The notes under the pieces: generated by a model | Seen by the model: only the letters and a program-made list of their open reading frames with translations | Database searches by the model: none | What the model was told of the DNA's origin: nothing | From: Octopus bimaculoides | Lineage: Eukaryota | Reading direction: 5' to 3' | Length of the DNA: 64,000 nt | Assembly (NCBI RefSeq): GCF_001194135.2 | Contig: NC_068996.1 | Location: 49,826,309-49,890,308, forward strand | Shown here: in pieces, positions 6,314 through 62,921 of the stretch | Layout of the letters: each line of letters starts with the position of its first letter | Position numbering within the stretch: position 1 is the first letter of the stretch | Made by a program: the position numbers and the translations under genes

Positions 6314-7626
6314 GTCTTTCACCTTCTAAATTGTTCTCGTCTTCACCTTTTAGTCAACGGAAACATGCATCATCCTACATCTTCATTTACTCTCTTTTAT
6401 TCCAATTTCCTAAATACTTTTAAGCAGATATTAACTGGTGACTGTTTTTATGTTACAATGATTATCCAGGACCAACAAGATTTTCATGGTTAAATTCCTT
6501 TTGTAATAAAACACCACATGTCAAATCAAACTAACTGTTTAGAACTATAAATTAAAACATCTTCCTTTGAAACCATCAATTTCTTTAAGAATCTATAATC
6601 AAACTACTCACATTTGCTAATATATCTACCAAACCATGTATCTACTTTATTTTTCCTTTACTATACACGAAGCTTTAACATACCTACACTACTCCTACTT
6701 GTAGCCTCCTTAACCCTTCAACATTCAGATTATTCTGTAAAATGTAATTCTTATTAAGCCTCAATTTTTTGAATTAATCATGCTTCATCTCATAGCTTTG
6801 AGATTTTGATGATGTGATTTTTTATTTTTAGAATGACATTGTAGGGTAGATGTGAGAGGCCAGAAATGGCTGGTTTGAACACAAAACACGTAGAATATTA
6901 GAGGTGGATATGACCAGTCTAAAAGCTAAAGAATTAAGCTTTACTCTGTCAAATGACATATTATTCTGTCAAATGTAATGCTGTAATGCTTATTTATTCA
7001 CATTGTTTTAAATTAATCATGTTTTATCTCATAGCATTGAGATTGTGATAATGTGGTTGTTTATTTTCAGAATGACATTGTAGGAGTAGTGTGAGAAAGC
7101 AGATCTGGCTGGTTTGAACATTAAACAGGTAGAATATTCGGGCCAAATATAACTAGTTTAAGATCTATAACTAGTTTAAAATCTAAAAGTAAAATTTAAC
7201 AAGAAAGCACAAACATTATATATCCTATTTCTTGTGAAAATTTCCTCAAAGACTTTTTTGTCAATGATGTATCTAAGACTACGACTGCTCAGTTTTTTTG
7301 AGAGTAAAAGCTTAAATCCTTAAAAATCAGAAGCTGATCTCTAAAACTAAACTGATAATAAAACTCTATTCCTCTGGGTTAAACCTCTAGCTTAACAGAA
7401 TCAATAATCAAGTAAAAAAAAAAAGAAAACGTACCATTTTGAACTTTAAAAAATGAACTTACTAAAATATTTTCTTTTCAAACTGGTATAACAAATGCAG
7501 TTAGATATTGTCTAGCATTGTGTAGGCAAACATGTTAAAGCATTGAAGAGAACTAAATATGTCATAAAGCAATATGTCCAGTAGAAAAATTAAGCAACAA
7601 AGAAAATTAAAAAAACAAAAACGTAC

Positions 7627-7700
7627 TAGTTTATCAGCTTCAGATAAAAGCCTTTGGAAATTTTCATCATCTGTAAGCCAACTTGGTAGTTCATTTGCTC
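7627..7700 (-). CDS. KIBRA: KIBRA exon (74 nt): (G)ANELPSWLTDDENFQRLLSEADKL
   Basis: Acceptor aatctttcag, donor gtacgt; phase 1 to 0; resembles GEKELPQWLREDERFRLLL. Confidence 0.93.
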
Positions 7701-13296: not shown

Positions 13297-13506
13297 TTTA
13301 CAAACATATGCACTGCCCTGTCTGTCTGCTGGTGAAAATGTCTGAGAACGTCTTATTGTACTCTTTCGAACAGTTTCTGTGGGACGTTTCTTTGCTTTGT
13401 ACACAAAATCACCATCTGTGTTTGTTCCCTTTTCACAAGTTTTGATTTCATCACCAGTATCAACCGATTCGTAGTTATCCAACGACGTCCAGCCTATAGA
13501 TGGATC
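13297..13506 (-). CDS. KIBRA: KIBRA exon (210 nt): DPSIGWTSLDNYESVDTGDEIKTCEKGTNTDGDFVYKAKKRPTETVRKSTIRRSQTFSPADRQGSAYVCK
   Basis: Acceptor ...cccacaaaag, donor gtaagt; phase 0 to 0; KxTNT and STIxRSxTFSP...YVC motifs. Confidence 0.93.
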
Positions 13507-17839: not shown

Positions 17840-19229
17840 CTAAACGGATATAAATGATGCCAGTTTATTTTATGAATACAAATTTTAAAAAGTATCTTAT
17901 GTGTGTATGTATAAATAAATACACACATATATATATCATCATTGGTTAACGTCCGTTTTCCATGCTGGCATGGGTTGGACGATTTGACTGAGGACTGGTG
18001 AACCAGATGGCTACACCAGGCTCCAATCTGGTCAGGCAGAGTTTCTACAGCTGGTTGCCCTTCCTAACGCCAACCACTCTGAGAGTGTAGTGGGTGCTTT
18101 TTATGTACCACCGGCACAGGAGCCAGTAAGGCAGGCCTGGCAACGACCACATTCGGATGGTGCTTTATGTCTATATATTCATTTGCATGAACACACACAC
18201 ACACACAAGCAGGTATATCTGTGTGTGAAGATGTATGGTGTAATGGTTTCAGTATTGAACCCAGAGACATTAGGTTGATAGTTAAGTTTTTGAAACAATG
18301 TGTCATGTCCTACAACAACACTTTACTTGCCATTGCTTGAATCCACTCAACTGAAAATGAGTACCAGAAATAGCTGGGCTATGAATAAAGATTAATCCCA
18401 CAACAGACTGATGTCCCATTCAACAGCTTTTCTTGTACTCACAACTGATTAAAAGCCACAAAAACTGGGATAAGCCTTGTCCTAAAAAGCCTTCAGGTTC
18501 AAGATAGACTAACTTTCTTTTTGTTTTTTGATTATCTGTATTTATATATCCACTGTTATCATCATCAGCATTTAATATCCACTTTCCTTGCTGGCATGCG
18601 TTGGGCAGTTTGACAGGATCTAGTAAGGCCAGGAACCACACTAGGCTCCATTATGATTTGGCATGTTTTCTACAGCTTCCTGACACCAAGTGTTTTACAG
18701 AGTATACTGGGTGTTCTGTTTTTATGTGATACCAGCATCAGTGCTTTGCTTTATATGTGGCACCAGCGCTTGTGTTACTAAATGTGAGTATATTATATAT
18801 AAATGTATATTCATAGTGATGTGATTACATATTGTCATCACGACATATCACTGTCATCATGCTGACATGGGTTGAAGAGATTGCCACAATCCAAGTCATC
18901 TATCATTGAGAGCTACAGCCCCTAAAAACTAAGTGGCCATACGTATCATTTGACTTGGTTTCTACAGCTGGATGCCCTTCCAAACAACAACCATTTTATA
19001 GAATATATTGGGTGCATTTTCTTGTGGCATCAACACTAGAGAGGTTGAACAGTCCTCGGCAAGACAAGAATAGAGAGACATTATGGACCTACACTATATC
19101 TGCTCACTTAGTCAATCACTTCATAGTTTGTGCAGTAAGGTGTATGTCAATATGAATACACATATATACCCATGTATCTGTGCATGTGTGTGAATTTATG
19201 TGGTCTGCTAATGTACATAAACAGATGAA

Positions 19230-21687: not shown

Positions 21688-22184
21688 CTAGAGATAGAAG
21701 AGAAGTACATTTATACACATGATTATCAATTTTTAAATATGTTTACATCAAGTTATCTAAATGGTATAATCATCACCATAAGCATTTTAATGTTCACTTT
21801 TGAATGCTAGCCTGGGTCAGACAGAATTTAGTGAGGCAGATTTTCTATGTCCTGATGTCCTTCCTGTTGCCAATCCTCACCGTTTCCAAGTAAGATATTT
21901 CCCCAAGGCCAGAGAGGTTTTCCACAAACAACTGGAAATGAACATCATTGATAATATGATGATGCTCAATTACAACCATCACTTGATGACAAGTGTGTGC
22001 ACACACAATGGTCTTCTTTCAGTTTTCATTTACAAAATCCACTCACAAGGCTTTGGTCGGTCCATAGTTACATTAGAAGACACCAGCTCAGAGTGCCATG
22101 TAGTGGGACTGAACCTGAAACCCTGTGGCTGGGAAGCAAGTTTCTTACCACACAGCCATGCCTGCACCTATGTTTATCAGCTCA

Positions 22185-22510
22185 AAGAGCGTGGCCGTTG
22201 CCAGTACCGCCTGACTGGCTCCTGTAGGATTTTCGAGCGAGATCGTTGCCAGTGCCCCTGGACTGGCTTGTGTGGGTGGCACATAAAAGACACCATTTCG
22301 AGCGTGGCCGTTTTCGTGCGGGTGACACGTAAAAGCACCCACTACACTCTCTGAGTGGTTGGCGTTAGGAAGGGCATCCAGCTGTAGAAACTCTGCCAAA
22401 TCAGACTGGAGCCTGGTGTTGCCATCCGGTTTCACCAGTCCTCAGTCAAATCGTCCAACCCATGCTAGCATGGAAAGCGGACGTTAAACGATGATGATGA
22501 TGATGATGAA
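22185..22510 (+). mobile_element. RTE 3'-UTR fragment (family B), young copy
   Basis: Near-identical to 37871-38207; other + copies at 11340-11615, 15975-16164, 57160-57250, 57360-57530. Confidence 0.88.
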
Positions 22511-23350: not shown

Positions 23351-24739
23351 CTGTAAATAAATAAACAAATAGATTTTTAAAAATCCACACTTCTTCAGAA
23401 ATCAATGCTAGCCACTGCATCACTACCATCCTCCTCCTTTTCCTCATCATCATTTGATATTCACTTTTCCCATGCTTGCATGGATTGGATGGAATTTGCT
23501 GAAGCAGATTTCTTCTAGCCTTCCTGTCACCAATCATTGTTTTCAAGCAAAGTAATATTTTCTGATGACCTGACATGGAAAACTGGAAGTGAATAACATT
23601 GATTGCTTGTATGATGGTGAAGCTCATTTGTAACCATCACAGGATGTGTAGACAAGGTCATATATACAGACACACACACACACACAAACAGACTTCCACA
23701 CAATATCTGTCTACCAAATGCACTTACAAGGCTTTGGTTGGGTCAAGGGTATAGAAGAAAACACTTATGAAAGATATCATACATTGGGACTGAACCCAAG
23801 ACCACATAGTTGTAAAGCAAGCTTCTTAAGCACACAGCTATGCCTGTACCAGTATAATCTTATAATTTCATCAATATAAGCATAGGGTATGACTGTGCTT
23901 ATAAAGATTGCTTCATAATCACACAGTCTTAAGTTCAATCCCACAGCAAGATATCTTGGGCAAGTGTTTTTTTCTTCTTTTTTTTACTCTAGTCTCATTT
24001 TAACTAATACTTAGTGACTGGAAAAAGAAACTGCAAGGAAGCTTGTTGTGTGCAAGTGCTTGTTGTGTGCACGCATATGAACGCCAATTCTACATAACGT
24101 CATTAGTACAATCTGAGTGAAAAGCAGTGACAATTGTTTACATTTTCCACTGAACTAATGTTACATAGTTCGGCAGATGTGTGTAAGAACCAGCGGAATA
24201 AAAGAGAAAAAAAAAACCTTACTTAAAAAGCATGTAAGGGTTGGTGAAGAGCCACAGAAAATCTACCTCAATAAGTTTTGTCTAACTCATTAGCAGCAGG
24301 GAAAAGCAGACATAAAACCAATGATGACGACGACAATGATAAACGACAATACATCAGGCTTTCTGATAAATGCCTTTTGTAACCTTGCATTTATCTTTTT
24401 GCTATCATTCTTCTGTTGAAATACATTGCCTTTGTTTCAATTACTTTTGAAGATAATGAAGAATTTAGTGAAATAACTTTTGTCATTATTAAATTGGTGT
24501 TTTGGAACATAAATTCACATGGAATTTCGATGGAAGATTTTAATTTAAATCACTTTAAAACAGGAAATCTTATTACCATAGAACCAGAAATGGTGTTAGA
24601 CAGGTTAATATCAAAAGGATTTAAAACAGTTTCATCGTTTACTCTTTTACTTGTTACAGTGGCCATGCTGGAGCACTGCCTTGTTGGGCATGAAGCACGA
24701 AGAGACTACACTGAAATACACATCTGTTGTCTTAATTTC

Positions 24740-28897: not shown

Positions 28898-29359
28898 TAG
28901 GTGCAGGCATGGTTGTGTGGCAAGAAGCCTGCCTGTCAACCATATGATTCTGGGTTCAGTCCCATTTGCCACACAATAGAAATGAACCCAGAACCATATG
29001 GTTGGGAAGCAAACTTCTTACCACACAACCATGTCTGCACCTATGATATATCATATCTGCTCCTTAATGTATTACTGCCATCATGGGAAAGAGCAACATT
29101 TTTATAGTATTTCAACTTTCTTTGTTACTCATTAGTCAGTTTGAACAATAAATATGCAGTATTAACAAAATATCCTTCACTGTTTTTAAAATAGTAAAAA
29201 CTTGGAAAAATATGCTTGCAAATATGTCACCAAAAGTTAACAACTTTCACTAAAAATATTAGTAAAGCTGTGAGTAAATTAATAAAATCTATTAAAAATT
29301 ACTTGTTCATTCAAACAATAAAATGTTGGTAAAGAAAGTAAGAACAAAAAGCAAATTAC

Positions 29360-30313
29360 CGTTTTACTGAAGCTTCAAAGACACCACTATCTCCGGTAAC
29401 AGACTCATCACTGACTGCTGCAGAAACACTGCTTGTATTTACACCAGAAAGATTGTTACAGACACCCGAGCTGGTTTCACTAATAGGGCTTAAAGGTGGG
29501 TTAGATGCAATGTCTGTATTATCTACATATGCGGATTGTGTGGTTCCTGCCATTACAACAGAAGGGTGCGTAGCTACTTGTTTGCAGATGGCACTTCCTT
29601 GTAATGTGTTGGTTACACAATCTGAGTCCACAGAATGTAGCATGTGTGGAGGGAGTTGATAAGGTGATGCAGTTTGGGTTGTGACGCTTGTGTTATTCAC
29701 CAGCAGCGGTAAAAAGTTAGCACTTTCAGTTAGTTGAACAGTCTTTGTTACTGGGTCAGCTGCTCCTCCCATGGCAAGGGACGAAGTAGCACCGGCCACA
29801 CGTTTCTGGCGTTCCACAGCATTCATGTGCTCTTCGTAAGAAGGTGGTGGACCAATATCGTAGGGTGAAGTTGGTGGAGATAATGAAGAATATGATGAAT
29901 GTGGTGACAAAGATGAAGGTTCACTCCCAACAACGGCAGTCTGATTTCCACCGGTTCCAACTTTCCGTGATGGGAATGGATGAGAAGAAGAAGAGCATGC
30001 CCCATAGTTAACCCCACTTGCAACTGGTTGGGAGGATAAGGTTGTGTCAGAGTTGGAAGCCCCTCCAATAGCTGCAGTAGCTATATTTAGATCTTTATCT
30101 AGAAGACCAGGTGAAATACTGTGACCTCTCAATCTTTGACCAACACAGCGATGAAGATCCTGCAAACTTTCATTGCTCAGTTGAGGTTGAATATAAATGT
30201 CTGTCATACTGGTTGATGCTAAAGATCCATGACTACTGGCAGATAGAGACCCTAAGGAACCAAGTGAACCCAAACTTGAGCCAGATGAGATTGACAGCTG
30301 ACTTGTTGAAGTG
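29360..30313 (-). CDS. KIBRA: KIBRA large exon (954 nt): Ser-rich region TSTSQLSISSGSSLGSLGS...SAAVSDESVTGDSGVFEASVK(R)
   Basis: Matches supplied ORF 29356-30273; acceptor cttttacag, donor gtaatt; phase 2 to 2; SAAVSDESVxGDSGVxEAS is diagnostic for the WWC family. Confidence 0.96.
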
Positions 30314-33170: not shown

Positions 33171-33403
33171 ACTTATAGGTAGAAATAACAACCAAATCAC
33201 TATTACATTATACCCGACCCATTTAAAAAAAACAACCCCAAAAAACATAGCCTGAACCTGAGTACAAAACAATGAGACGGTCATGTGTGGAACAATGCCC
33301 TTAACCATGGGCCTGCTTTACTAGAGCTGACCTGGAACTAGTCAACCACAACAACAACAACTTAATCTTCTGTATTGATTAATGATTGACAAAACCCAAT
33401 TAC

Positions 33404-33568
33404 CTGTCGCTGATCGATTTATCAGAACTTCCAACTGCAAGACAAATATCTCTTTCCAATTGTGTAATTCTTGATTTGATTGATGTTAATTCGTGTTCAC
33501 TACGCCCTTTGTCATCTATACTCTTTAACTCTCGAAGTAGTTGCTCTTTTTCTTTTAATAGCAATAAC
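33404..33568 (-). CDS. KIBRA: KIBRA exon (165 nt): LLLLKEKEQLLRELKSIDDKGRSEHELTSIKSRITQLERDICLAVGSSDKSISD(R)
   Basis: Acceptor cacttcag, donor gtaatt; phase 2 to 2; coiled coil LILINEKEELLKE-like. Confidence 0.93.
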
Positions 33569-34307
33569 CTGAAGTGAGAAAAGAATTTATGATCTAAAAT
33601 AAGTGTTTCATGTTATCAAAACTGAATCAAAATTAATTTCAGTTCATTGTGGATAAATGCAGAATCATATCAACAATCGACTTAAATTTATTCTCAACTG
33701 CAAAAGTATTTGAAGCAGGTTGTTTCATGATAGGCTATCAATTAGTAAAGAATTTTACTAATACTGGTAAAATTTCACACCTTGGGTAACAAGATAAAGT
33801 ATTTTGAAAGTGCAGGCACGAAAGTAAATTCTTTGATTTTCTTCAGAATATTTCATGCAATTAATTCAAATGATTAACATTTTCTCACTAACATTTCTCT
33901 TCATATTCTTGCAGAAAAAAATACTGATTAATTTTTACACTTGAACATTTCCTCTAAGCTTCATGGTACATGGCTATGCAGTCGCTATATTGGGGTCAAC
34001 TATTTTAATTTACAAATGTGTGCATGATAAGCTGCATTAGAATTTAAATGTTGCACATCACCTTTGAATTTAAAATGTTCTTGCTCAAAATTTCAAAAAT
34101 TTCATTCAGTGATTTGTAAAAATTGAAGGAAATGTAGATTTAAACTCTAATGATCCTTTTGGAGGCTATAACAGAAGCAAACTGTGGGGTTTCTTCCTCA
34201 TAGTCACTAAATAATTTATTGCAAACAACTTCTAACCTAAAACCTCATGGCCCTATGGTTAGATCAAAACAAACCTATAGTATTGTTATAAAAGGGCCCT
34301 AAGTTAA

Positions 34308-34473: not shown

Positions 34474-35328
34474 TTAAACATATTTATCTATTTCATCATA
34501 TTTTTCCTTTTTATGATTTTTATCTGCATATTTAAAGGAACAATATATATAACCTAGCATAGGGTAGGGTGGACATAGTCAAAATTAATACAAGGGTCCT
34601 ATTATTTATTACTTTATCTAAAACTTTGATATTTATTTGTCACTCAACTTTAGGGGACAAGTTAACCCACAAAGATGACAGCTTAGACACGATAAATTAA
34701 TGATAAATTTCCTTCACAGATCTAGATTTCATTTCAAACCAAATATAAAGCTTAAATTCTTAACATTATATGAATTCACTGATACAGTGTTACCCAAGAT
34801 GGACAAGTTAAAAATTCTGTCCTGACACATAACTTTAACCTTTTTCCAACCAGCCACTAACTCCCTCTCATCATTGTTTTAAGGTCCACTTTCCTATGCT
34901 TGCATGGGTTGGGTGGAATTTGTTAAAGTGGATTTTTCTTTTTTTCATTTGCATGATGGTGAAATTTGTTTACAACTATCACTTGAAGTCAAGACAAGGA
35001 GGGGAGAGTAACACACACACACAATGTGTTTCTTTCAGTTTTTATCTCCCAAATCCACTTACAAGGCTTTGGGCACACTGGGGCCTTAGTAGAAGGCACT
35101 TGCCCAAGGTGCCATGCAGTAGGACTGAACCTGGAACCATGTGGTTGGAAAGCAAAGTTCCTAACCACACAGCCATGCCTACATCTATAACAAACAACAT
35201 ACAAAAAAAGAAAAACCAAATCAAACAAAATTATTTTAATGTTTGAAATGCATATTCCATAAATAAAACAAATAGCAGATAATAAGGAATTAGTAAGATT
35301 TACATGAAAATTATTGTAAATGTATTAC

Positions 35329-35480
35329 CTATCTTTATCAGATTCCTTTTGTCCAGGCACCAGCTGAGACTGAGCTTTTACTAATTGCATCTTTAAATTG
35401 GAAAAATTCTTCTTTAATTCGTCAAACTGAAGTTGTATCTGAGTTTGCTCTGCAAGTTTGTTGTCAGTTGACAAACCGAG
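35329..35480 (-). CDS. KIBRA: KIBRA exon (152 nt): LGLSTDNKLAEQTQIQLQFDELKKNFSNLKMQLVKAQSQLVPGQKESDKD(R)
   Basis: Acceptor caacag, donor gtaata; phase 0 to 2; aligns to WWC1 [28 protein letters not shown]. Confidence 0.9.
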
Positions 35481-35670
35481 CTGTTGTTGTTTTTTTTTCC
35501 ACAGAAGAAGAAGATAAAAAGAAAAGAAATTTGTGAAAGAATAAATCTTTGCAAAGAGAAAGAAAGTCTGTATGCATGAGTTTGTTTGAAGGGAGAAAGA
35601 GCGAGAGAGGAGAAACAGAGTAAAAAGGGAAATATAGATAGGAGGGAGAAAGACAAAGAAAAATAGTAAG

Positions 35671-35709
<39 letters not shown>

Positions 35710-35973
35710 GAAAAAGAGAGAGAGAGTTAGGTATATTAATGAAATGGTTATAACTGTAAAGCACCTAACTTACAATTTTAACAGATGTGTAAGTTTTAAA
35801 TGAGCTTTTATTCCTGCAAAACAATCGGTTATAAAAAGTCATAGCTTTGTGGCAAGTAGCAAAAAAAAAAAAATGTTACCTCAATCAAACTTTCTAGAAT
35901 TGAAAATGTTTTCCATAGAATTTTGACAAAATAAAAAGCAAAGCAACAAAAGCGAATTAATCAAAATACGTAC

Positions 35974-36099
35974 TTCCCAACTTATGTCTGTCTGAGATGC
36001 AGTACTGGCTTTCTCTTGAGGTATAGAAAGTGTTGATAAATCTGGAGAAGACCCATTATTCCGACTGAGTGTTAAATCATCTTTCAACCTGGCAAGTGA
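35974..36099 (-). CDS. KIBRA: KIBRA exon (126 nt): SLARLKDDLTLSRNNGSSPDLSTLSIPQEKASTASQTDISWE
   Basis: Acceptor ttttttag, donor gtacgt; phase 0 to 0; SLAxLKD and SQTDIS motifs. Confidence 0.92.
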
Positions 36100-37395
36100 C
36101 TAAAAAACAGAAAATAAAAAATAAATAAATATATACATTCTTTTACTTGTTTAAGCCATTTGACTGCGGCCATGCTGGAGCACCACCTTCAATCAAACAA
36201 ATCGACCCCAGTTCTAATTTTTTGTAAGCTTAGGACTTATTTTATCAGTCGCTGAAATGTTAAGTTACGGGGATGTAAATGCACTAACATATATATATAT
36301 GTATATATATATATCATCATCATCATCATCGTTTAACGTCCATTTTCCATGCTGGCGTGGGTTGGACAGTTCAACTGGAGTCTGGGAAGCCAGGAGGCTG
36401 CACCAGGCCCCAATCTGATCTGACAGTGTTTCTACAGCTGGATGCCCTTCCTAATGCCAACCACTCTAAGAGTGNNNNNNNNNNATCTGATCTGACAGTG
36501 TTTCTACAGCTGGATGCCCTTCCTAATGCCAACCACTCTAAGAGTGTAGTGGGTGCTTTTTATGTGCCACCAGCACAGGGTCCAGAGGAGCTGACATCGA
36601 CTATGATTGGATGGTGCTTTTTATGTGCTACCAGCATGGGGCTCACAACTACAATTTCCATTTGATTTGATTTTGATGTTGATACACATACAATAGTTTT
36701 CTTTCAGTTTCCGTGTAACAAATCCACTCACAAGTCTTTGGTGGGCCTGAGGCTATAGTAGAAGACACTTAAATGCCATGCAGTGGGACTGAATCTGGAC
36801 CCATGTGGTTGGGAAGCAAGCTTCTTACCACACAGCTACTCCTATCATTATATATTATAATTATTATATTTATCATTATCATTAACATCATCATTTAATG
36901 TCCATTTCTAATGTTGGCATAGTTTGGAGAGTTTGGCAGGAGCTGGCAAGCCAGAGAACTACACCAAGCTTTATGGTCTGTTTTGGAAGGATTTCTACAA
37001 CTGGATGCTCTTCCGAACACCAGCTACATCACAGAATGTACCAGGTGCTTTTTACATGGTACCATCATCAGTGGGGGTCACTCAGTGCCTAGCAAGACAA
37101 AGACCCCTTGACTAGGATGAGAAGTAATATTGAGAGAGGTAGCTCTGTACCAGTTGAGAAGTTAAAGGATAACAGAAGGAAGCATATATTTCTTCCTATA
37201 GAAGAGAAAGGGTCATTCTATAACTATTATATCAGTTATATTTTTTTTATATTATCATCACATTATGAAAACTATATGTAAATATTACTAAATGATGATC
37301 ATGATGAATAGAATACTTTCCTAATAACATATTCTTGTAAATAGGCATAAAGTCACAGACCATGTAATTTTATTGGCTGTGGAGAAAATGATTCC

Positions 37396-38175
37396 AGTTG
37401 TGGTGTGCAAGAGAGACGATTGCGTTAGTATGGTCATGTGGCGAGAATGGACGAGGATAGCTGTGTGAAAAAGTGCCACACCCTAGCGGTGGTGGGAACC
37501 TGTGGAAGAGGTAGGCCCAGGAAGACCTGGGATGAGGTGGTGAGGCAAGACCTTCGAACATTGGGCCTCACTGAGGCGATGACTTTTGACCAAGACCTTT
37601 GGAAATATGCTGTGCGTGAGAAGACCTGGCAAGCCAAGTGAGACCTAAATCCAAGGCCTCTGCCAGGGGTGTAGCCAGCCCACTTATGCGTACNNNNNNN
37701 NNNNNNNNNNNNNNNNNNNNNNNNNNNNNNNNNNNNNNNNNNNNNNNNNNNNNNNNNNNNNNNNNNNNNNNNNNNNNNNNNNNNNNNNNNNNNNNNNNNN
37801 NNNNNNNNNNNNNNNNNNNNNNNNNNNNNNNNNNNNNNNNNNNNNNNNNNNNNNNNNNNNNNNNNNNNNNGTGCCCGCAGCATGTGTAATGACTTTCGAG
37901 TGAGATCGTTGCCAGTGCCCCTGGACTGGCTCTTGTGCGGGTGACACATAAAATACACCATTTTGAACGTGGCCGTTGCCAGTACCGCCTGACTGGCCTT
38001 CGTGCGGGTGACACGTAAAAGCACCCACTACACTCTCTGAGTGGTTGGCGTTAGGAAGGGCATCCAGCTGTAGAAACTCTGCCAAATCAGATTGGAGCTT
38101 GGTGTAGCCATCTGGTTTCACCAGTCCTCAGTCAAATCATCCAACCCATGCTAGCTTGGAAAGCGGACGTTAAAC

Positions 38176-41600: not shown

Positions 41601-42550
41601 TATAGAAAAGATATCATTGAAGACTACACTTTTATCCAAGTCTTTTAGTTTTTTTACATGAAAAATTCAAGTAAGATATTAAAAAAAGGAGGGGTGGGAT
41701 AGTAGGCAAGCCTGCCTTTAAACCTGTACATACTTCAAATTAATCTGCTAGCTAAACATTCATGACTACAAAACACCTGGTATTGTTGTAAACAGTGCTA
41801 TCAAAAATTGAGGCAGACTATATACAAAGATAGGAAGCTAGGAGAAAAATGATTAAATAACTCAGATACTGTTAAAAGTTAAAATCCTCAGAGCAAAACC
41901 TACAAGACAAAATAGAATTATTTGAAGCTGTCCTCAAGAACAATATTAATCACAATCTCTCTGATTCAGTCCATGAAATGGGAGAGGGGGAAATATATCA
42001 AGTAATCAAAGTTGAAGACAGTAACATACACACACAATTGGGTTAATTCAATGGTGAAGAAGTTATTTCAATTATCTTAACATTAAATTCTCAAACAACC
42101 CAAAAGTATTATTAGAAATCTTGGATGGTTCATTTGTTGCAAATGCTCATGGAGAAATAACAGAAGAACTAGAAGAGGGCAATAAAAAAAAAGAGCTGAC
42201 ATACTAAAAGCAAGAAAAGAGCTTGTTGTCATTATGGTACACATAATTCAATCATCATCATCACTGTCATTTAACATCCATTGTCCAATGCTGACATGGG
42301 TTTGACAGGAGTTGACCAGCTGGGGAGTTATCCAGACTCCAACTGTCTGTTGTGGCTTGGTTTCTATGGCTGGATACTCCTACTAATGCTAACCACTTTA
42401 CAGAGTGTGCTGGGTGCTTTTTACGTGGCACCAGCACTGGCACAAGTGCATTTTATGTGGCACTGGCACCTGTAAAGAACAAGCCTGTATGTATGGATAA
42501 AAGGTAAAACAAAAAAAGACATCCAAAAATAACTGGATCTGTATGCTGTT

Positions 42551-43030
42551 GAATGAATGAATGAATGAATTCCAATATCTTAAATCTGGGTCTGTCTCCA
42601 TTAATGGGGGTGACCGGATCTACCACACTCTTACAGCAACAGCTCTCACACCATCTTGTCCAGTTTTGGGTGTCCTCCCTCCCAAAACCAACCCACCCAA
42701 TCTCTTCCTCCACCTGTCCCCTCCATGTTTTCTTCGGTCAACTTCATTTTTGTGGTTCATTCACTCTCCTCAGAACATGATCCTTATCCCTCCTCAACAC
42801 ATGTCCATACCACTGCACACCATTCACCCTTGCCAGTTGTTCCACCGATTCCTCCAACCCCAGCATCCCCATCAAGTCCTTAGCCCACCTTTTATCTAAT
42901 AATTTCACACCACACATTGCTCTCTCAGTCCTTCTCAAAATTGCCATCTCTCTCTCTCCCTCAGACACCATGTCTCACTCCGATACAGAATTGCAGATCT
43001 CATGCAACTCTGATAAACTCTTCCTTTCAT
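42551..43030 (-). mobile_element. RTE-like LINE 3' end with (TTCA)n tail
   Basis: Supplied ORF 42744-42971: LRRTERAMCGVKLLDK...LGLEESVEQLARVNGVQWYGHVLRR; gaat repeats at 42551-42570. Confidence 0.75.
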
Positions 43031-48440: not shown

Positions 48441-48906
48441 TTTGGGGGGGGGGGGCAGCGATATAAATGGATGGTGGTGAAGAAGGAGAGATAATTTGGT
48501 GGCTTGACAGAGAGATCAGTGTAAAATGTGGGAAGAGATGACAGTATAAGGATGAATATCAAATGAGAAAAATTTTTAATATAAAGAGGAAAGCTGCAGT
48601 TAGAGAGATGATGGGTTTTGGGAGTGTCTTCACAACAAAACTAGGTGAAGGGCCCAGTTTTGGATCGGATGGACACACAGTGTTTTAGTACTTTGTTATA
48701 ACATTAACTTTATCACTAAGAGGAATTACCCTTGTATTAGGATTACTATCTAAATTAATCATCTTAAATATGATTCTAAAAATAAATGTAATTTCATTAT
48801 CTTATTAGTTTATATTTCTAAATATTTCAGTTCTATATTTAAGAGATGAGGAATTATGTACGTTATTTACATTTGACAGATATTTGTCCTCATCTTGTTT
48901 GTTGTT

Positions 48907-48952
48907 AACACAATGTTTTGGCTGATATACCCTCCAGCCTTTATCAGGTGTC
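48907..48952 (-). ncRNA. Hammerhead motif, degenerate (CTGATAA; AAAAC)
   Basis: gacac-CTGATAA-a-ggctg...cagcc-AAAAC-att-gtgtt. Confidence 0.6.
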
Positions 48953-49187
48953 TTGGGGAAATTTCAAACCTGGGTTCGCATTCCTAAGGTATTTTTCAAT
49001 GTTATTATTATTATTCAGGTCACTGCCTGGAATCAAACTCGGAATCTTAGGGTTAAGAGCGCGGGCTACTAACTCCAAGATTCCGAGTTCGATTCCAGGC
49101 AGTGACCTAAATAATAATAACAATAATAATAATAATAACATCGAAAAATAACATAGGAATGAGAACCCAGGTTTGAAATTTCCCCAA

Positions 49188-49233
49188 GACACCTGATGAA
49201 GGCTGGAGGGTATATCAGCCGAAACATTGTGTT
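49188..49233 (+). ncRNA. Minimal type-I hammerhead ribozyme motif (Penelope-type), core intact
   Basis: gacac-CTGATGA-a-ggctg[gagggtatat]cagcc-GAAAC-att-gtgtt; helix I gacac/gtgtt, helix II 5 bp; helix III palindrome altered (acgt to acat). Confidence 0.75.
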
Positions 49234-49340
49234 AACAACAAACAAGATGAGGACAAATATCCGTCAAATGTAAATAATATACATTTCTAAATATATTTAT
49301 AAAATCTTTTTATATATTTAAAACAAAGGAGGAAGCCTGT

Positions 49341-49380
<40 letters not shown>

Positions 49381-54449: not shown

Positions 54450-55811
54450 CTCTAGTGCACTTACCTGTAAATAAGTAACTCTATGATAGACTGATGCTCT
54501 GAACAAGAGGAATGCTAGCCTGCCTGCCTAAACAGTAAGGTGGCATCATTCAGAAGGTACAACAATGCAAGGAAGTACATTGTGACTAGACACCTGACAG
54601 CCTGGGTGATACAGTTGTGTGTGTATGTGTGTACACATGCATACACACACACACACACACACACACAGAGCTAGTTTGCATAGTTTCTGTTCATCAAATG
54701 CACTCATAAGGCATTTGTCAATCCAGAGCCACTGTGTAAGGCACTTACCCAAGGCTCAAGCAGTGCAACAGAACTCAGGGCCACAAGGTAACAAAGCAAA
54801 TTTTATATAATAATTATTTTATGGTTATTATATATAATAATTCTATCATCATCATCATCATTGTTTAACATCTGCTTTCCATGCTAGCATGTGTTGGACG
54901 ATTTGATTGAGGACTGGCAAGCCAGAAGGCTGCACTAGGCTCCAATCTGATTTGACAGAGTTTCTACATCTGGATGCCCTTCCTAACGCCAACCACTCCG
55001 AGAGTGTAGTGGGTGCTTTTACATGCCACCGGCACGAGAGTCAGTCACGCGGTACTGGCAACGGCCACGTTCAAAAAGGTAAGATTTATATAAGCAACTC
55101 TAAAACCTGTTTATTACATGTTTGATTGTAAGTTTCCATCTGTTTCAGTTAATTGTACAATGAAGGAATATTTCTCCTCTGTAAATCTTAAGAAACATTA
55201 GTGTCAACTTCAGTGTAGAAGAAGATTTTATCACACTAATACTTTAGGTCAGTGTTCTTACATTATGATACTATATACTGTCTGAATTGCAACATGGAAG
55301 AAAAACAATGTATGGAAAAAAAATAAAGGGTTATGGTGAGCATAATCTGTAGGATATGCAATATTAAACTGTGCAGAAAAGCAAGTGGGTATTAAAACAG
55401 AGCAGCTAAACAGTGTTAGAGCACCAACTGCAGTGTTTATATAGTAATCATCATCCTCGTTTAATGTCGGTCTTCCATGCATGCATGGGTAGGACAGTTG
55501 ACAGGAGCCAACCAGGTAGAAAAACTGACCTATGCTACTCTGTTTTGGCAAGGATTTTATGGCTGTATGCCCTTCCTAACCCTAACCACTCTGTAGAGTG
55601 GATTCAGTACTTTTTACATGGCTCTTGCACAGGCAAGGTTAGTTTTGGCAAGATTTTTACAGCTGGATGCCTTTTCAAATACCAACCATTTTACAGAGTG
55701 GACCAGACGCTTTTTACGTGGCACAAGCACTGGCAGGGTCACCAAATAACTCACAAGACAAGGAATTATGAGAGGGGGAAGGGGGCATTTGAGGAGGGGG
55801 ACTTGTGTCAA

Positions 55812-59689: not shown

Positions 59690-61900
59690 AATATTCCAAC
59701 ACCATCACTAACAAAAATTTACAAAGATTCTTTTCTAAATCATAATGGAAAATTAATAACCCTGAGATATGAAATCAAGGCTCAGAGTGAAAACTCCATT
59801 ATCAAGACAAAAATGTTACAGCAGGCCAGGATAAAATACTGCCATAAAACGGGCCCTTCCTAGGAAGATCTAAAATCATTCTGGTCTAACTAAGATTTGG
59901 AATGAGAGTAAGGATTTTAATTGGAGTGTGACATGGTTTGGTTCAAGAAATTGAGAATACTGTCAGCGTTAATAGTTACACATTCAATCTTAAAATTCAC
60001 CAATCCTGTGGGAAAATTAAATTATGGGAAGATATCAGGAAGAAACCTCATAGGCAGATATTGGTACAAGAAGTTGACTTTTTGTAGAAAGTCACTTATA
60101 CAAATGCTTGAAAAAGATAGACTTACAAACACTGCATTGGCTTAGAACTACAGAGGTTAACATTACATACAAATTGCACATAATCTGTCTGAGCCAATTC
60201 CTCCAAGACCATTGAGAGTTTAATGATAGTCACTGACAAGCTGACAAGTGGAAAGAAAGGAGTGTGGGGATGCATCAAACAAATGTTGGTAAATAAAGCT
60301 GTGCTGTCTGAAGAAAACAAAACCTTGTGACAGTATAGCTTGATTACAGAATGGCATTCAATTCCATTCTCCACTTATGGCAACTGAAGTTACTGCAGCT
60401 GGCAAAAGTACCTGCAACCTCAGTTGCTTCCATCAAAAGACTCACAAAGGCCTAATCCACAATTCTTACACTTGTAACTGAAAGTGGAACAATTGTCTCT
60501 ACAGACTGCTATTTGATATTAATATTGTTCCATTGCTAATGACTAATTTTATATTTGGTCTGGCAGCTATCTGCAATACTAGCGACTGATTAGTCACTGC
60601 TTTACTATATCAGTAGAAGCAAAGTCTGGTTAGCATGTGGTTATATTGGATACCAGTGGCCAATCACAATCGAATTCACAGAAATCACATGATAAAGCAA
60701 TTTCATTGCTGATATAGACATTTTTCATCTACTGCTGAGACTTCTGAGCTCTTTAGCACTATACACCTATATGAGATGATTTATCAAGACAAATATCACA
60801 GTATTACAGTGTTTTTACAAAATACCCATATTAAGTAGGATATAGAGATTGCTAATTGTCCCTGATATCATAAATATTTCCTAAGTAACAGTTAATCTAT
60901 GCTTCTGTTTATTTTGGCTCTAAATCAACAGTCATTTCATCATCATTTAACGTCCGCTCTCCATGCTAGCATGGGTTGGATGATTTGACTGAGGACTGGT
61001 GAACCAGATGGCTACACCAGGCTCCAATCTGATCTGGCAGAGTTTCTACAGCTGGATGCCCTTCCTAACGCCAACCACTCCGAGAGTGTAGTGAGTGCTT
61101 TTACATGCCACCGGCACGAAGGCCAGCCAGACGGTACTGACAACAGCCATGCTCAAAATGGTGTCTTTTACGTGCCACCTGCACAGGAGCCAGTCCAGCG
61201 GCACTGGCAACGACCTTCTTCGAATGTCTTTTCACATGCCACCGGCACAAGTGCCAGGAAGGCGACGTTGGTAACAATCATGCTCAAAGGTGCTATTTAC
61301 GTGCCGCCGGCATGGAAGCCAGACAGCTGGTGCTCTGGCAACGATCACGCTCGGACGGTGCTCTTAGTGCTCCACTGGTACAGGTGCCATCACGATTCTT
61401 CAAGTGTTTCACTACATTCCCTACTCAACAAAACAAGAACTGCTAATACCTGGGTATTGATGAAAATATATTGTACAAAGGTAATGTGAACAAGGACAGA
61501 GTAACCAAAGAATATAATACTAGACTTAAAAAGATATGGCAATTAGAGCTTTCCTAGTACAACAAAACACTATCCCACAATGCATTTGCAATACCCATAT
61601 TGATACCAACATTTGGGATTATAGACTGATCATCATTGGCGTCATTGTTTAACATCCACTTTCCATGCTGGCATGGGTTGGATGGTTTGACTGAGAACTG
61701 GTAAATCGGGAGGCCGTGCCAGGCACCAATCTGATTTGGCATGGTTTCTACAGCTGGATGTTCTTGCTAATGCCAACCACTCCAAGAGTGTAATTGGTGC
61801 TTTTTACATGCCACTGGCACAGGTGCCAGGCAAGCAGCACAGGCATTTATAGAAGAAATCTGTTCTGTAGATACAAGATCCTGGTATCGACTGCAAATTT
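59690..61900 (+). mobile_element. R4/Dong-like (RLE-type) non-LTR retrotransposon RT remnant, interrupted by family-B insertions
   Basis: KISGRNLIGRYWYKKLT; GCIKQMLVNKAV...LDYRMAFNSILHLW; FIADIDIF; 61447-61626 YLGIDENILYKGNVNKDRVTKEYNTRLKKIWQLELS*YNKTLSHNAFAIPILIPTFGIID. Confidence 0.8.
60935..61400 (-). mobile_element. RTE 3'-UTR fragment (family B), longest UTR copy, inserted in the R4-like remnant
   Basis: Same sequence as 16165-16475 but extends further 5'. Confidence 0.88.
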
Positions 61901-61954: not shown

Positions 61955-62650
61955 AAGTTCCTTCCTAGAAAGAGCTAAAATCATTCTGGTATAAGACCTG
62001 GAATGAGAGTAAGGATTTTAACTGGAGTGTGACATGGCTTGCACAATAAATTGCGAATACTGTCAGCATTAATAATTATACATTCAATCTTAAAATTCAC
62101 TTAATCTTGTGGGAAAGCTAAATTATGAGAAGATACCAGGAGGAAACCTCATAGGCAGATATCAGTACAAGCTGACTTTTAGTAGAAAGTTGTCATTGTT
62201 ATCATCATAATCATCGCTTAATGTCCACCTTCCATGCTGGCATGGGTGGGATGATTTGACAAGAGCTGGCCAAGCAGAAGCCTGCACCAGAATTCTGTGA
62301 CTATTTTGGCAGGATTTTTACAGCTGGATGTCCTTCCTAACACCAACCACTCAGCAGAGTGGACTTAGTGCTTTTTATGTGGTACCAGCACAGGCGAGGT
62401 CAGTTTTGACAAGGTTTTTGCAACTCGATGCCCTTCCAAATGCTAACCACTTGGTGCTTTTTCTGTGGCACCTGCACTGGCAGGGTCACCAAGTAACTTG
62501 CAAGACAAAAATCTTTTGATACTTATACAAATGCTTAAAAAAACTATGGAAGGCCATAAGAGAGATGTATGAGAAGAAGCTTAAGATTAGTAGACAGCCT
62601 TTGAATGCTGTATGACATTGCTCAGGCAACACTTGTTAGACAAAGGCACT
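61955..62650 (+). mobile_element. Second R4/Dong-like fragment (duplicate of 59855-60120), split by a 330-bp insertion
   Basis: Direct similarity to 59855-60120; resumes at acttatacaaatgc (62521). Confidence 0.75.
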
Positions 62651-62665
62651 ATACCATATGCCCGT

Positions 62666-62736
62666 GGGCATATGGCGTAGTGGTTAAGAACGTGGGCTAC
62701 TAACCCCAAGATTCCGAGTTCGATTCCAGGCAGTGA

Positions 62737-62772
<36 letters not shown>

Positions 62773-62921
62773 CATTGAAAAATACCTTAGGAATGAGAAC
62801 CCAGGTTTGAAATTTCCCCAAGACACCTGAAGAAGGCTGGAGGGTATATCAGCCAAAACGTTGTGTTAACAACAAACAAGATGAGGACAAATATCCGTCA
62901 AATGTAAATAATGTAAATAAT
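62666..62921 (+). mobile_element. HH-SINE single copy: tRNA head + (TAA)n + body + hammerhead + (ATGTAAATA)2
   Basis: Box A TGGCGTAGTGG 62673-62683, box B GTTCGATTC 62718-62726; preceded by inverted ccatatgccc (62654-62663). Confidence 0.88.
62822..62867 (+). ncRNA. Hammerhead motif with G12A change, palindromic helix III intact
   Basis: gacac-CTGAAGA-a-ggctg[gagggtatat]cagcc-AAAAC-gtt-gtgtt. Confidence 0.65.

What the first reader, a model, noticed from the sequence alone, without database searches (positions are those of the whole stretch)
49188..49233. A tRNA-headed SINE-like element carries a Penelope-type minimal hammerhead ribozyme
Seen: three copies (48907-48952 on -, 49188-49233 and 62822-62867 on +) give the consensus gacac-CUGAUGA-A-ggcug(loop)cagcc-GAAAC-GUU-guguu. 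This has helix I gacac/guguu, a 5-bp helix II, an extra A after the CUGANGA box and a self-complementary AACGUU helix III. It lies about 150 nt downstream of Pol III boxes A and B. Established: minimal type-I hammerheads with a palindromic helix III, thought to act as dimers, mark Penelope-like element terminal repeats; Schistosoma SM-alpha is a tRNA-related repeat with a hammerhead. Inference: a non-autonomous Pol III retroelement that defines its own 3' end or circularises by self-cleavage and borrows a Penelope RT. I know of no description of this in cephalopods, but have not searched.
Basis: partly seen in the sequence, partly recalled or inferred. Interest (0 to 1): 0.9.

Follow-up and report, generated by a model that had tools for sequence, protein, structure and literature searches.

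The report
Octopus SINE with Penelope-type hammerhead motif
A short tRNA-headed mobile element in an octopus genome carries a worn copy of the minimal hammerhead ribozyme typical of Penelope retrotransposons and inserts as Penelope-style head-to-head pairs, which suggests a so far undescribed SINE–Penelope partnership rather than a self-cutting element.

Summary
A minimal-hammerhead descriptor with one core mismatch finds copy 3 and hit only 1 of 400 shuffled windows.

No copy is intact. Copy 2 keeps CUGAUGA and GAAA but has lost the CG palindrome. Copy 3 has G12A. Copy 1 has three hits. Two further copies from Octopus vulgaris and a distant relative show these sites carry the full CpG-decay spectrum, so an intact ancestor is likely. 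However, 4 of 5 octopus copies have A at G12.

The motif has the Penelope min-HHR hallmarks: an extra nucleotide after A9, G10.1-C11.1, a 6-bp helix II, a 5-bp helix I and a palindromic 15.2-16.2. The carrier has Pol III boxes A and B, an (AAT)n tract and no internal T4.

Two independent loci, the window and O. vulgaris, are abutting head-to-head pairs. Each is flanked by a 12-14-bp target duplication and has an identical 30-nt tail at one outer end only. This is the published Penelope insertion signature.

All copies run 54-88 nt past the predicted cleavage site. Self-cleavage therefore does not define the ends, and nothing suggests circles. The Penelope partner itself could not be compared. 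This is a new variant of known kinds.

The parts
62666..62921 (+). Copy 3: the only full-length monomer of the SINE. It comprises a tRNA-like head, (AAT)n, a body, the hammerhead motif and a 3' tail ending ...GTCAAATGTAAATAATGTAAATAAT.
   Evidence: blastn and alignments. There is no TTTT on the sense strand (read). It is the copy closest to the family centre, with about 1 private change in 186 columns.
62673..62683 (+). Pol III box A, TGGCGTAGTGG. It matches TRGCNNAGTGG exactly.
   Evidence: Pattern scan. This is the only A+B pair in the window.
62716..62727 (+). Pol III box B region, GAGTTCGATTCC. The core GTTCGATTCC matches GTTCGANNCC.
   Evidence: The same box is in copy 2 at 49085-49096.
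62741..62767 (+). Internal (AAT)n microsatellite between head and body. Its length differs in every copy.
62822..62867 (+). Hammerhead motif of copy 3: GACAC-CUGAAGA-A-GGCUGG(8-nt loop)UCAGCC-AAAA-CG-UU-GUGUU. It has G12A, and the CG palindrome is kept. The predicted cleavage site lies between 62862 and 62863.
62647..62663 (-). A 17-nt inverted copy of the SINE 5' end (CACTATACCATATGCCC). It abuts copy 3 with a 2-nt spacer (GT). No target duplication was found for this locus.
   Evidence: O. vulgaris L013 has the same centre, CCATATGCCC-AT-GGGCATATGG. Origin unexplained.
48814..48825 (.). Left copy of the 12-bp target-site duplication ATTTCTAAATAT that flanks the inverted pair.
   Evidence: 20 of 3000 random flank pairs share a word of 12 nt or more. 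Positions.
48828..48857 (-). 30-nt tail extension ATAATTCCTCATCTCTTAAATATAGAACTG, present only at the outer end of the inverted arm.
   Evidence: It is 100% identical to L013 11980-12009(-) in O. vulgaris, in the same position. It was absent from 100 shuffles.
48858..49055 (-). Copy 1: the inverted arm, 5'-truncated in the anticodon-like region.
48907..48952 (-). Hammerhead motif of copy 1, with three lesions: G8A, G12A and G16.2A.
49051..49282 (+). Copy 2: the direct arm, 5'-truncated in the D-arm-like region. It overlaps copy 1 by about 5 nt at a stretch where GGTTAAGAG can pair with CTCTTAACC (microhomology junction).
49188..49233 (+). CUGAUGA and GAAA are intact, but 15.2-16.2 is C/A, so the dimer helix III is broken. 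The predicted cleavage site lies between 49228 and 49229.
49283..49294 (.). Right copy of the target-site duplication ATTTCTAAATAT.

Best explanation
**What it is.** This is a young family of tRNA-derived, Pol III-type SINEs of octopuses, about 256 bp plus an optional 30-nt tail. Its 3' half descends from the terminal region of a Penelope-like element (PLE) and so carries that region's minimal type-I hammerhead.

**How it most likely moves (inferred).**
1. Pol III transcribes the element from boxes A and B. There is no internal T4 terminator.
2. A PLE reverse transcriptase / GIY-YIG endonuclease recognises the PLE-like 3' module.
3. It integrates the RNA by PLE-style target-primed reverse transcription.
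4. cDNA is primed on both sides of a staggered cut about 12-14 bp wide. One cDNA starts at the true RNA 3' end, which carries the 30-nt tail. The other starts about 30 nt further in, at a short microhomology.
5. The two cDNAs are joined head to head through self-complementary stretches of the tRNA-like head.

**What the hammerhead does (inferred).** It is an inherited part of the recognition module. Any cleavage would need two RNAs, with ACGU pairing to ACGU as a shared helix III. It does not set the element's ends, and most sampled copies are catalytically dead.

**Shown versus inferred.** Shown: the motif architecture, the promoter boxes, the pair/tail/duplication anatomy in two species, and copies that extend past the cleavage site. 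Inferred: the PLE partner, Pol III transcription, the two-cDNA mechanism and an intact ancestor.
For: **Motif**
- The reported sequences are confirmed.
- The motif is non-random: 1 of 400 shuffled windows gave a hit.
- It shows all four extra traits listed for PLE min-HHRs in PMC4209133. These are a nucleotide between 9 and 10.1 (5 of 5 copies), G10.1-C11.1, a long helix II with a short helix I, and a palindromic 15.2-16.2.
- Position N7 varies between U and A, as the CUGANGA consensus allows.

**Ancestral state**
- The G12 column reads CG, CA, CA, CA and TA, with TG in the L001 relative.
- The 15.2-16.2 column keeps CG in one copy of each species.
- CpG retention over all sites of these copies is 21 of 46.

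**Head**
- Boxes A and B are present at the right spacing.

**Integration**
- Window pair: 48828-49282, with a 12-bp duplication.
- O. vulgaris pair: L013 11980-12497, with a 14-nt duplication that occurs in 1 of 2000 random pairs.
- The flanks of the two pairs differ, so they are independent events.
- The 30-nt tail is identical in both and sits at one outer end only.
- Arm-to-arm distances fit arms that were identical at insertion.
- PMC8557442 lists the inverted 5'-truncated copy and the one-sided 30-40-bp tail as PLE-specific features not seen in non-LTR TPRT.
- PMC4209133 reports paired min-HHRs 100-700 bp apart on opposite strands.

**Partner availability**
- O. vulgaris has 30 recently active Penelope families (PMC13282606).
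Against: - No PLE sequence from an octopus could be fetched, so the defining test (3' homology to an autonomous PLE) was not done.
- Four of five copies have A at G12, and no copy is intact. Recent master copies may already have been dead.
- Rfam gives no hammerhead or tRNA hit.
- There is no compensatory covariation.
- Copy 3 has no target duplication and only a 17-nt inverted stub, which the two-cDNA model does not predict.
- Another octopus SINE family also shows tandem plus inverted arrangements (L011), so the signature may not be unique to a PLE partner.
- The sample is only three insertion loci plus a fragment.
Confidence: 0.55

Rival explanations
1. This is an ordinary LINE-mobilised tRNA-SINE with a (TGTAAATAA)-like repeated tail. 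The hammerhead-like stretch is a relic or passenger with no link to Penelope. The inverted pairs arise from template switching by a LINE reverse transcriptase.
For: - The 3' end carries short repeat units (GTAAATAAT GTAAATAAT in copy 3, duplicated again in OvL), as in CR1/L2-type SINE tails. That comparison rests on my own knowledge.
- Another octopus SINE family shows inverted and tandem arrangements.
- LINE-like ORF remnants occur in the window, although Pfam did not confirm them.
- Four of five copies have a dead G12A core.
Against: - The motif matches PLE min-HHR traits that were not built into the search.
- Two independent abutting head-to-head pairs with both arms 3'-complete need two templates, unlike twin priming on a single RNA.
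- PMC8557442 describes the one-sided conserved tail as not seen with non-LTR TPRT.
- No LINE 3' end in 206 kb of octopus DNA matches the tail.
Confidence: 0.2
2. The mobile unit is the whole ~500-bp inverted pair. It would be copied from a single hairpin-forming RNA that starts at CAGUUC..., or moved as a foldback/MITE-like DNA transposon. Monomers such as copy 3 would be 5'-truncated products.
For: - The outer end CAGTTC... is precise in both pairs.
- Copy 3's 17-nt stub looks like a 5' truncation just past the centre.
- The stub and OvL share GGTATAGTGG where right arms have GGCGTAGTGG.
- The centre CCATATGCCC-RT-GGGCATATGG is nearly the same in L013 and at copy 3.
Against: - No promoter would drive such an RNA, because the box A/B promoters fire outward from the centre.
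- Arms do not cluster as left versus right across species. Their distances fit arms that were identical at each insertion.
- The window pair has both arms truncated at different points.
- The outer ends are asymmetric and the duplication length is not fixed at a transposase-typical value.
- A 30-nt 3' fragment exists on its own (L009).
Confidence: 0.12
3. This is a retrozyme-like element. Hammerhead cleavage of multimeric transcripts would give unit RNAs that circularise and serve as rolling-circle templates.
For: Metazoan type-I hammerheads are typically in non-LTR retrozymes linked to PLEs (PMC7229834; bioRxiv 10.64898/2026.07.22.740005). Schistosoma Sm-alpha combines a Pol III promoter with a hammerhead (PMC6765202).
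Against: - There are no direct tandem units at any locus.
- No copy is circularly permuted.
- All copies share 3' termini 54-88 nt beyond the cleavage site and are 5'-truncated in the way of linear TPRT products.
- The helix III palindrome is only 4 bp.
- Most cores are mutated.
Confidence: 0.05
4. The resemblance is chance: the hammerhead boxes and helices are accidental features of a SINE body.
For: No copy passes a strict descriptor. Rfam is silent. There is no covariation.
Against: - Only 1 of 400 shuffled windows gives even a one-mismatch hit.
- The lesions are almost all CpG-type.
- The best-conserved stretch in the distant L001 relative is exactly the box/helix II region.
- The extra PLE-specific traits and the PLE-type insertion anatomy coincide.
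Confidence: 0.05

Closest known systems
Minimal type-I hammerheads of Penelope-like element pseudo-LTRs (Cervera & de la Pena 2014, PMC4209133; Lunse et al. 2017, cited but not readable here)
   Same: - Type-I topology.
- No helix III loop.
- Palindromic 15.2-16.2, implying a dimeric helix III.
- An extra nucleotide between A9 and G10.1.
- G10.1-C11.1.
- A long helix II (6 bp) and a short helix I (5 bp).
- Often found as single motifs, or as two motifs 100-700 bp apart on opposite strands.
   Different: Here the motif sits behind a tRNA-like Pol III head in a ~256-bp element with no ORF. Published solitary motifs were interpreted as truncated PLEs. The palindrome is the shortest possible (ACGU).
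Schistosoma Sm-alpha / Sj-alpha SINE-like elements with hammerheads (Ferbeyre 1998 and Laha 2000, as summarised in PMC6765202 and PMC8490949)
   Same: A short non-coding retroelement, apparently transcribed by Pol III, that carries a type-I hammerhead.
   Different: Sm-alpha has a canonical, active hammerhead with a helix III loop and occurs largely in tandem arrays whose multimeric transcripts are cut to units. This element has a minimal motif, dispersed single or head-to-head copies, no tandems, and ends that are not set by cleavage.
Metazoan non-LTR retrozymes (PMC7229834; bioRxiv 10.64898/2026.07.22.740005)
   Same: Non-autonomous, hammerhead-bearing, and proposed to depend on PLE enzymes.
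   Different: Retrozymes are direct tandem repeats expressed as circular RNAs and have no tRNA-derived promoter. Neither tandems nor permuted copies are seen here.
PLE insertion architecture (Craig et al. 2021, PMC8557442)
   Same: An adjacent inverted 5'-truncated copy, a 30-40-bp tail at only one end, frequent 5' truncation and a target duplication.
   Different: The inserted unit is a SINE rather than a PLE. No partial direct tandem (pLTR) is seen, and the targets are AT-rich but not microsatellites.
LINE-SINE tail sharing (my own knowledge: Ohshima/Okada; Kajikawa & Okada 2002) and the octopus tRNA-derived SINEs OR1/OR2/OK (Ohshima & Okada 1994, cited in PMC10886601)
   Same: A composite of a tRNA-derived head plus a 3' module borrowed from the autonomous partner. 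The head resembles a tRNA-Arg-type T-arm region, judged from memory.
   Different: The presumed partner is a PLE, not a LINE. Identity with OR1, OR2 or OK, or with a Repbase/Dfam entry, could not be tested.

Membership tests
Hammerhead ribozyme, minimal type-I (PLE type) | CUGANGA box | tested here: met
   Intact in 4 of 5 octopus copies and in the L001 relative. Copy 1 has G8A.
Hammerhead ribozyme, minimal type-I (PLE type) | GAAA box with G12 | tested here: inconclusive
   G12 is present only in copy 2 and the L001 relative. Four of five octopus copies have A. The column shows the CpG-decay spectrum, so an ancestral G is favoured but not proven.
Hammerhead ribozyme, minimal type-I (PLE type) | Helices I and II in type-I order, with G10.1-C11.1 | tested here: met
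   89% of cells are paired, against 18-49% when partners are slid. Both helices form the MFE fold in all three window copies.
Hammerhead ribozyme, minimal type-I (PLE type) | Extra nucleotide between 9 and 10.1, and a palindromic 15.2-16.2 for a dimeric helix III | tested here: met
   The bulged A is present in 5 of 5 copies. CG is kept in copy 3 and OvL and reads CA in the others, which is CpG decay. Traits are as listed in PMC4209133.
Hammerhead ribozyme, minimal type-I (PLE type) | Helix covariation | tested here: inconclusive
   There are 0 compensatory double changes and 4 one-sided compatible changes. The result is not different from shuffles, and the sequences are too few and too similar.
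Hammerhead ribozyme, minimal type-I (PLE type) | Match to curated Rfam hammerhead models | tested here: not met
   No hit at gathering score or at E<=10. This is expected for motifs without a helix III loop, so it carries little weight.
Hammerhead ribozyme, minimal type-I (PLE type) | Self-cleavage after H17 | not testable with these tools
   Needs in vitro transcription of a monomer and a dimer.
Non-autonomous element mobilised by a Penelope-like element | 3' sequence shared with an autonomous PLE of the same genome | not testable with these tools
   No octopus PLE sequence could be fetched. Contig look-ups and protein searches were exhausted. None is present in the 206 kb held.
Non-autonomous element mobilised by a Penelope-like element | Adjacent inverted copy, a one-sided 30-40-bp tail and a flanking target duplication | tested here: met
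   Seen in two independent loci in two species. Hallmarks are as defined in PMC8557442.
SINE (tRNA-derived, Pol III) | Internal box A and box B at tRNA-like spacing, with no internal terminator | tested here: met
   The sequence was read.
SINE (tRNA-derived, Pol III) | Recognisable tRNA homology | tested here: not met
   ARAGORN and the Rfam tRNA model do not call the head. By eye, only the D-stem and the boxes survive.
SINE (tRNA-derived, Pol III) | Dispersed copies with target duplications and 5' truncation | tested here: met
   Three loci plus a 30-nt tail fragment, in two species. Duplications flank both pairs; none was found for copy 3.
Non-LTR retrozyme | Direct tandem repeats, each carrying a hammerhead | tested here: not met
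   Only inverted pairs and a monomer are seen.
Non-LTR retrozyme | Circular RNA intermediates | not testable with these tools
   Needs RNA data.

The most novel reading that the evidence does not exclude
This would be the first SINE that parasitises a Penelope-like element. Its minimal hammerhead would act not as a processing ribozyme but as an RNA-RNA dimerisation and RT-recognition module. Two SINE RNAs held together by the palindromic helix III would be delivered to one staggered GIY-YIG cut and be copied from both nicks. That would generate the head-to-head pairs, and by extension explain the long-puzzling inverted copies and one-sided tails of PLEs themselves.
Probability: 0.15. Interest if true: 0.85.

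Novelty: new variant of a known kind. Interest (0 to 1): 0.62.

Why it matters
SINEs are known to borrow LINE machinery. A tRNA-headed SINE that borrows Penelope machinery was not found in any paper I could search. Most octopus SINE families remain unclassified: 893 of the 900 recently active families in PMC13282606.

If confirmed, it would do three things:
- It would give a small, abundant and easily marked reporter for the poorly understood PLE integration mechanism (inverted copies, one-sided tail).
- It would allow a natural test of whether PLE hammerheads need to cleave at all, because this family seems to have spread with the motif but perhaps without G12.
- It would help classify a large share of octopus repeats.

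If the partner turns out to be a LINE, this is an ordinary SINE with a curious relic.

Tried and rejected
- **Rfam cmscan.** The whole window at gathering score and both loci at E<=10 gave no hammerhead and no tRNA hit.
- **Exact and degenerate DNA patterns.** Searches of viral, metagenome and GTDB contigs found nothing.
- **Protein trick.** A stop-free frame of the SINE gave no hits.
- **KIBRA-exon homologues as a route to related genomes.** The best was only 59% identical. L001 gave one decayed relative of the body, motif and tail. L003-L006 gave none.
- **Abundant-repeat ORF as a route to octopus DNA.** This worked and yielded seven O. vulgaris loci.
- **Covariance model.** A model built from the six motifs, searched over all 304 kb, found only the training sequences.
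- **ViennaRNA dimer folding.** The MFE dimer is an extended duplex, not the double hammerhead, so it is uninformative.
- **Covariation count.** Inconclusive.
- **A longer, degenerate target duplication instead of a tail at copy 1**. Rejected once the same 30 nt turned up in O. vulgaris.
- **Orthology of the two pairs.** Rejected because the flanks differ.
- **Large ORFs in O. vulgaris loci as possible PLEs.** They are C2H2 zinc-finger genes or have no domain.
- **ORFs upstream of the L009 tail fragment.** No RT was found.
- **Literature.** No paper prints these sequences. The Cervera 2014 supplement is not held. Lunse 2017 and Ferbeyre 1998 are not held.

Full report
**1. Observation**

They lie in three copies of one repeat:
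- Copy 3 is a monomer at 62666-62921(+).
- Copies 1 (48828-49055, -) and 2 (49051-49282, +) form a head-to-head pair.

The copies are 93.5-95.7% identical to one another.

I wrote a descriptor for the minimal hammerhead of Cervera and de la Pena. It requires helix I of at least 4 bp, CUGANGA, an optional bulge, helix II of at least 4 bp, GAAA, a 2-6-nt palindrome, UH, and the 3' strand of helix I. Results:
- Strictly applied, it finds nothing in the window.
- With one core mismatch it finds only copy 3.
- Dinucleotide-preserving shuffles of the window gave 0 of 60 and then 1 of 400 windows with any such hit.

Helices I and II are the predicted minimum-energy fold of all three copies, with modest z-scores of -1.1 to -2.1. 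Rfam finds no hammerhead, and no tRNA, at gathering score or at E<=10. Models that expect a helix III hairpin would not be expected to score a motif that lacks one.

**2. State of the motif**

No genomic copy is intact:
- Copy 2 has CUGAUGA and GAAA, but 15.2-16.2 reads C/A instead of C/G.
- Copy 3 has G12A.
- Copy 1 has G8A, G12A and G16.2A.

Public DNA collections did not contain the element. I reached related genomes indirectly, in two ways.

First, a KIBRA exon in the window (29356-30273, -) led to locus L001, from a more distant species. L001 holds a decayed relative of the body, motif and tail. Its alignment score is 87, against 41.6 +/- 6.2 for shuffles.

Second, an ORF-like stretch of the window's most abundant repeat hit only Octopus vulgaris 'hypothetical proteins'. 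That gave seven O. vulgaris loci totalling 142 kb. These loci share hundreds of repeat matches with the window, so the window is from an octopus. One of them, L013, holds two more copies of the element.

Across the five octopus copies:
- The bulged A is invariant.
- CUGANGA is intact in four copies, with N7 either U or A.
- Helix II is GGCUGG/UCAGCC in four copies.
- The G12 column reads CG, CA, CA, CA and TA, with TG in L001.
- The 15.2-16.2 column keeps CG in one copy of each species.
- Over all CpG-type columns of these copies, retention is 21 of 46.

A site retained in one copy of five is therefore unremarkable, and an intact ancestral core is the likelier reading. By a rough likelihood argument of my own, it is favoured by tens to one. 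Plain majority rule still gives A at G12, and copy 3, which lies closest to the family centre, has A. It therefore remains possible that recent master copies were already catalytically dead.

Pair counting shows 89% of cells paired, against 18-49% when partners are slid. There were no compensatory double changes, so covariation is not demonstrated.

**3. What kind of hammerhead**

The motif shows the traits that PMC4209133 lists as emerging from PLE min-HHRs without having been part of their search:
- a G10.1-C11.1 pair;
- a larger helix II and a shorter helix I;
- a palindromic 15.2-16.2 with no helix III loop.

The same paper reports pairs of such motifs 100-700 bp apart on opposite strands. 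That is the arrangement at 48907-48952(-) and 49188-49233(+).

**4. The carrier**

Copy 3 starts with a degenerate tRNA-like head:
- Box A is TGGCGTAGTGG at 62673-62683.
- Box B is at 62716-62727.
- This is the only such pair in the window.

ARAGORN and the Rfam tRNA model do not call the head. After the head come an (AAT)n tract of variable length, a ~55-nt body, the motif and a ~54-nt tail. The sense strand has no T4 run, so Pol III could read through. This last point is inference.

**5. Insertion anatomy, the main new evidence**

Window pair:
- The arms overlap by about 5 nt at a stretch where the D-arm-like GGTTAAGAG can pair with the anticodon-like CTCTTAACC.
- Both arms run outward to the element's 3' end.
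- The pair is flanked by the 12-nt direct repeat ATTTCTAAATAT (48814-48825 and 49283-49294). Only 20 of 3000 random flank pairs share a word that long.
- The inverted arm alone carries 30 extra nucleotides at its outer end (48828-48857).

O. vulgaris pair (L013):
- Both arms are full length and meet at CCATATGCCC-AT-GGGCATATGG.
- The pair is flanked by the 14-nt repeat CATTACTAGTTTTA, which occurs in 1 of 2000 random pairs.
- The inverted arm carries the same 30 nt, identical at every base.

The flanks of the two pairs are unrelated, so these are independent insertions. The 30 nt are element sequence, not target. Distances between arms (12 and 24 differences in 186 columns) fit arms that were identical at insertion and have aged since. 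Arms do not group as left versus right across species.

PMC8557442 describes three features as characteristic of PLE insertions and not seen with non-LTR TPRT:
- an inverted 5'-truncated copy placed directly next to the element;
- a 30-40-bp tail, often at only one end;
- a target duplication of variable length.

O. vulgaris has 30 recently active Penelope families, and 893 of the 900 recently active SINE families are unclassified (PMC13282606).

**6. What self-cleavage cannot be doing**

The predicted cleavage site (GUU|GUGUU) lies between 62862 and 62863 in copy 3 and between 49228 and 49229 in copy 2. It sits 54-60 nt inside the right-arm-type 3' ends and 88 nt inside the tail end. All copies share these termini and differ only by 5' truncation. 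A fragment made of just the last 30 nt also exists (L009).

No locus shows direct tandems or permuted copies. I read the motif as part of a 3' module inherited from a PLE and used for recognition. Any cleavage would be weak and dimer-dependent, as published for PLE min-HHRs.

**7. Loose ends**

- Copy 3 has no detectable target duplication.
- Just upstream of copy 3 lies a 17-nt inverted copy of its own 5' end (62647-62663).
- That stub and the left arm of L013 share GGTATAGTGG, where right arms have GGCGTAGTGG.

A later deletion of most of a left arm would explain the stub and the missing duplication, but not the shared TA. A model in which the whole pair is the mobile unit would explain all three, but it lacks a promoter and is not backed by the distance matrix.

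Another octopus SINE family shows tandem plus inverted arrangements (L011). How specific the signature is to a PLE partner therefore needs a genome-wide control.

**8. Comparison and novelty**

Known pieces:
- hammerhead-bearing SINE-like elements in Schistosoma (PMC6765202; PMC8490949);
- min-HHRs in PLEs;
- PLE-dependent retrozymes (PMC7229834; 2026 preprint);
- short non-autonomous Penelope derivatives (PMC6685494).

In the held literature I found no tRNA-headed SINE with a PLE-type tail, and no hammerhead reported in a cephalopod SINE. Repbase, Dfam and SINEBase could not be consulted. The family may already be catalogued as an unclassified SINE, or as one of the 1994 octopus SINEs, without the motif having been noticed.

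**Verdict**

This is a new variant of known kinds, with moderate to high interest. That interest depends on the one test I could not run: homology of the tail to an octopus Penelope element.

Noticed in passing
window 29356-30273(-), 33403-33612(-), about 35328-36099(-): Exons of a KIBRA/WWC1 gene on the minus strand. Pfam WWC1 helical hairpin (PF25802) scores E=2.6e-16 at 33403-33612. The large exon's best relatives are only 59% identical. The SINE copies lie upstream of, or in introns of, this gene.
   Followed up: partly
window 17988-18275(+), 22148-22441(-), 36288-36662(+), 54907-55122(+), 60989-61486(+) and others: This is the window's most abundant repeat, another tRNA-derived SINE-like family with a stop-free frame (...LQLDALPNANHSESVVGAF...). 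Its only protein-database relatives are seven 'hypothetical predicted proteins' of Octopus vulgaris. Those are therefore probably repeat-derived gene-model artefacts.
   Followed up: partly
L008 15950-16130(-) (O. vulgaris OX597840.1): A ~170-bp unit embedded in a (TA)n microsatellite carries a second min-HHR-like motif with one core mismatch: CTTT-CTGTAGA-A-GAGC-GTAG-GCTC-GAAA-CG-TA-AAAG. It looks like a 5'-truncated PLE end in the (TA)n target type reported for some PLEs. It is unrelated in sequence to the SINE tail.
   Followed up: partly
L011 4200-4780 and 19100-19470; L009 about 13440-13500 (O. vulgaris): Another SINE family (head ...GGTAGAAAGGTTAGCACATCGGGCGAAATCC...) occurs as a full copy, then a 5'-truncated direct copy, then an inverted partial copy. 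This tandem/inverted arrangement is also reminiscent of PLE-type insertions. It has no hammerhead boxes.
   Followed up: no
L001 about 7484-7658(-) (ENA ERZ21867824 ctg114822l): A decayed relative of the SINE body, motif and tail sits in a more distant species, with no tRNA-like head upstream. The box/helix II region is its best-conserved part (31 nt at 81%). It keeps G12, and 15.2-16.2 reads TG.
   Followed up: partly
window 62647-62682: An imperfect 36-nt palindrome lies at the 5' end of copy 3: a 17-nt inverted stub, GT, then the SINE 5' end. The stub carries TA where the SINE has CG, as does the left arm in L013. Origin unexplained.
   Followed up: partly
window 28898-29043: An inverted pair of two tRNA-like SINE heads of the abundant family (69-nt arms, 8 nt apart) lies directly next to an assembly gap (N run).
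   Followed up: no
window 23775-23858(-): ARAGORN calls a tRNA-Leu(AAG), but the Rfam scan of the whole window found no tRNA at gathering score. It is probably a SINE head or a pseudogene.
   Followed up: no
window 37429-37638(+), 42456-42737(-): Short ORFs contain motifs such as ...GRGRPRKTWDEVV.... From my own knowledge these resemble C-terminal regions of non-LTR retrotransposon ORF2 proteins. Pfam did not confirm them.
   Followed up: partly
window about 49343-49378: A (GT)n microsatellite lies about 50 bp to the right of the inverted SINE pair. The window also has several N gaps (1729 N in all), so the assembly is a draft.
   Followed up: no
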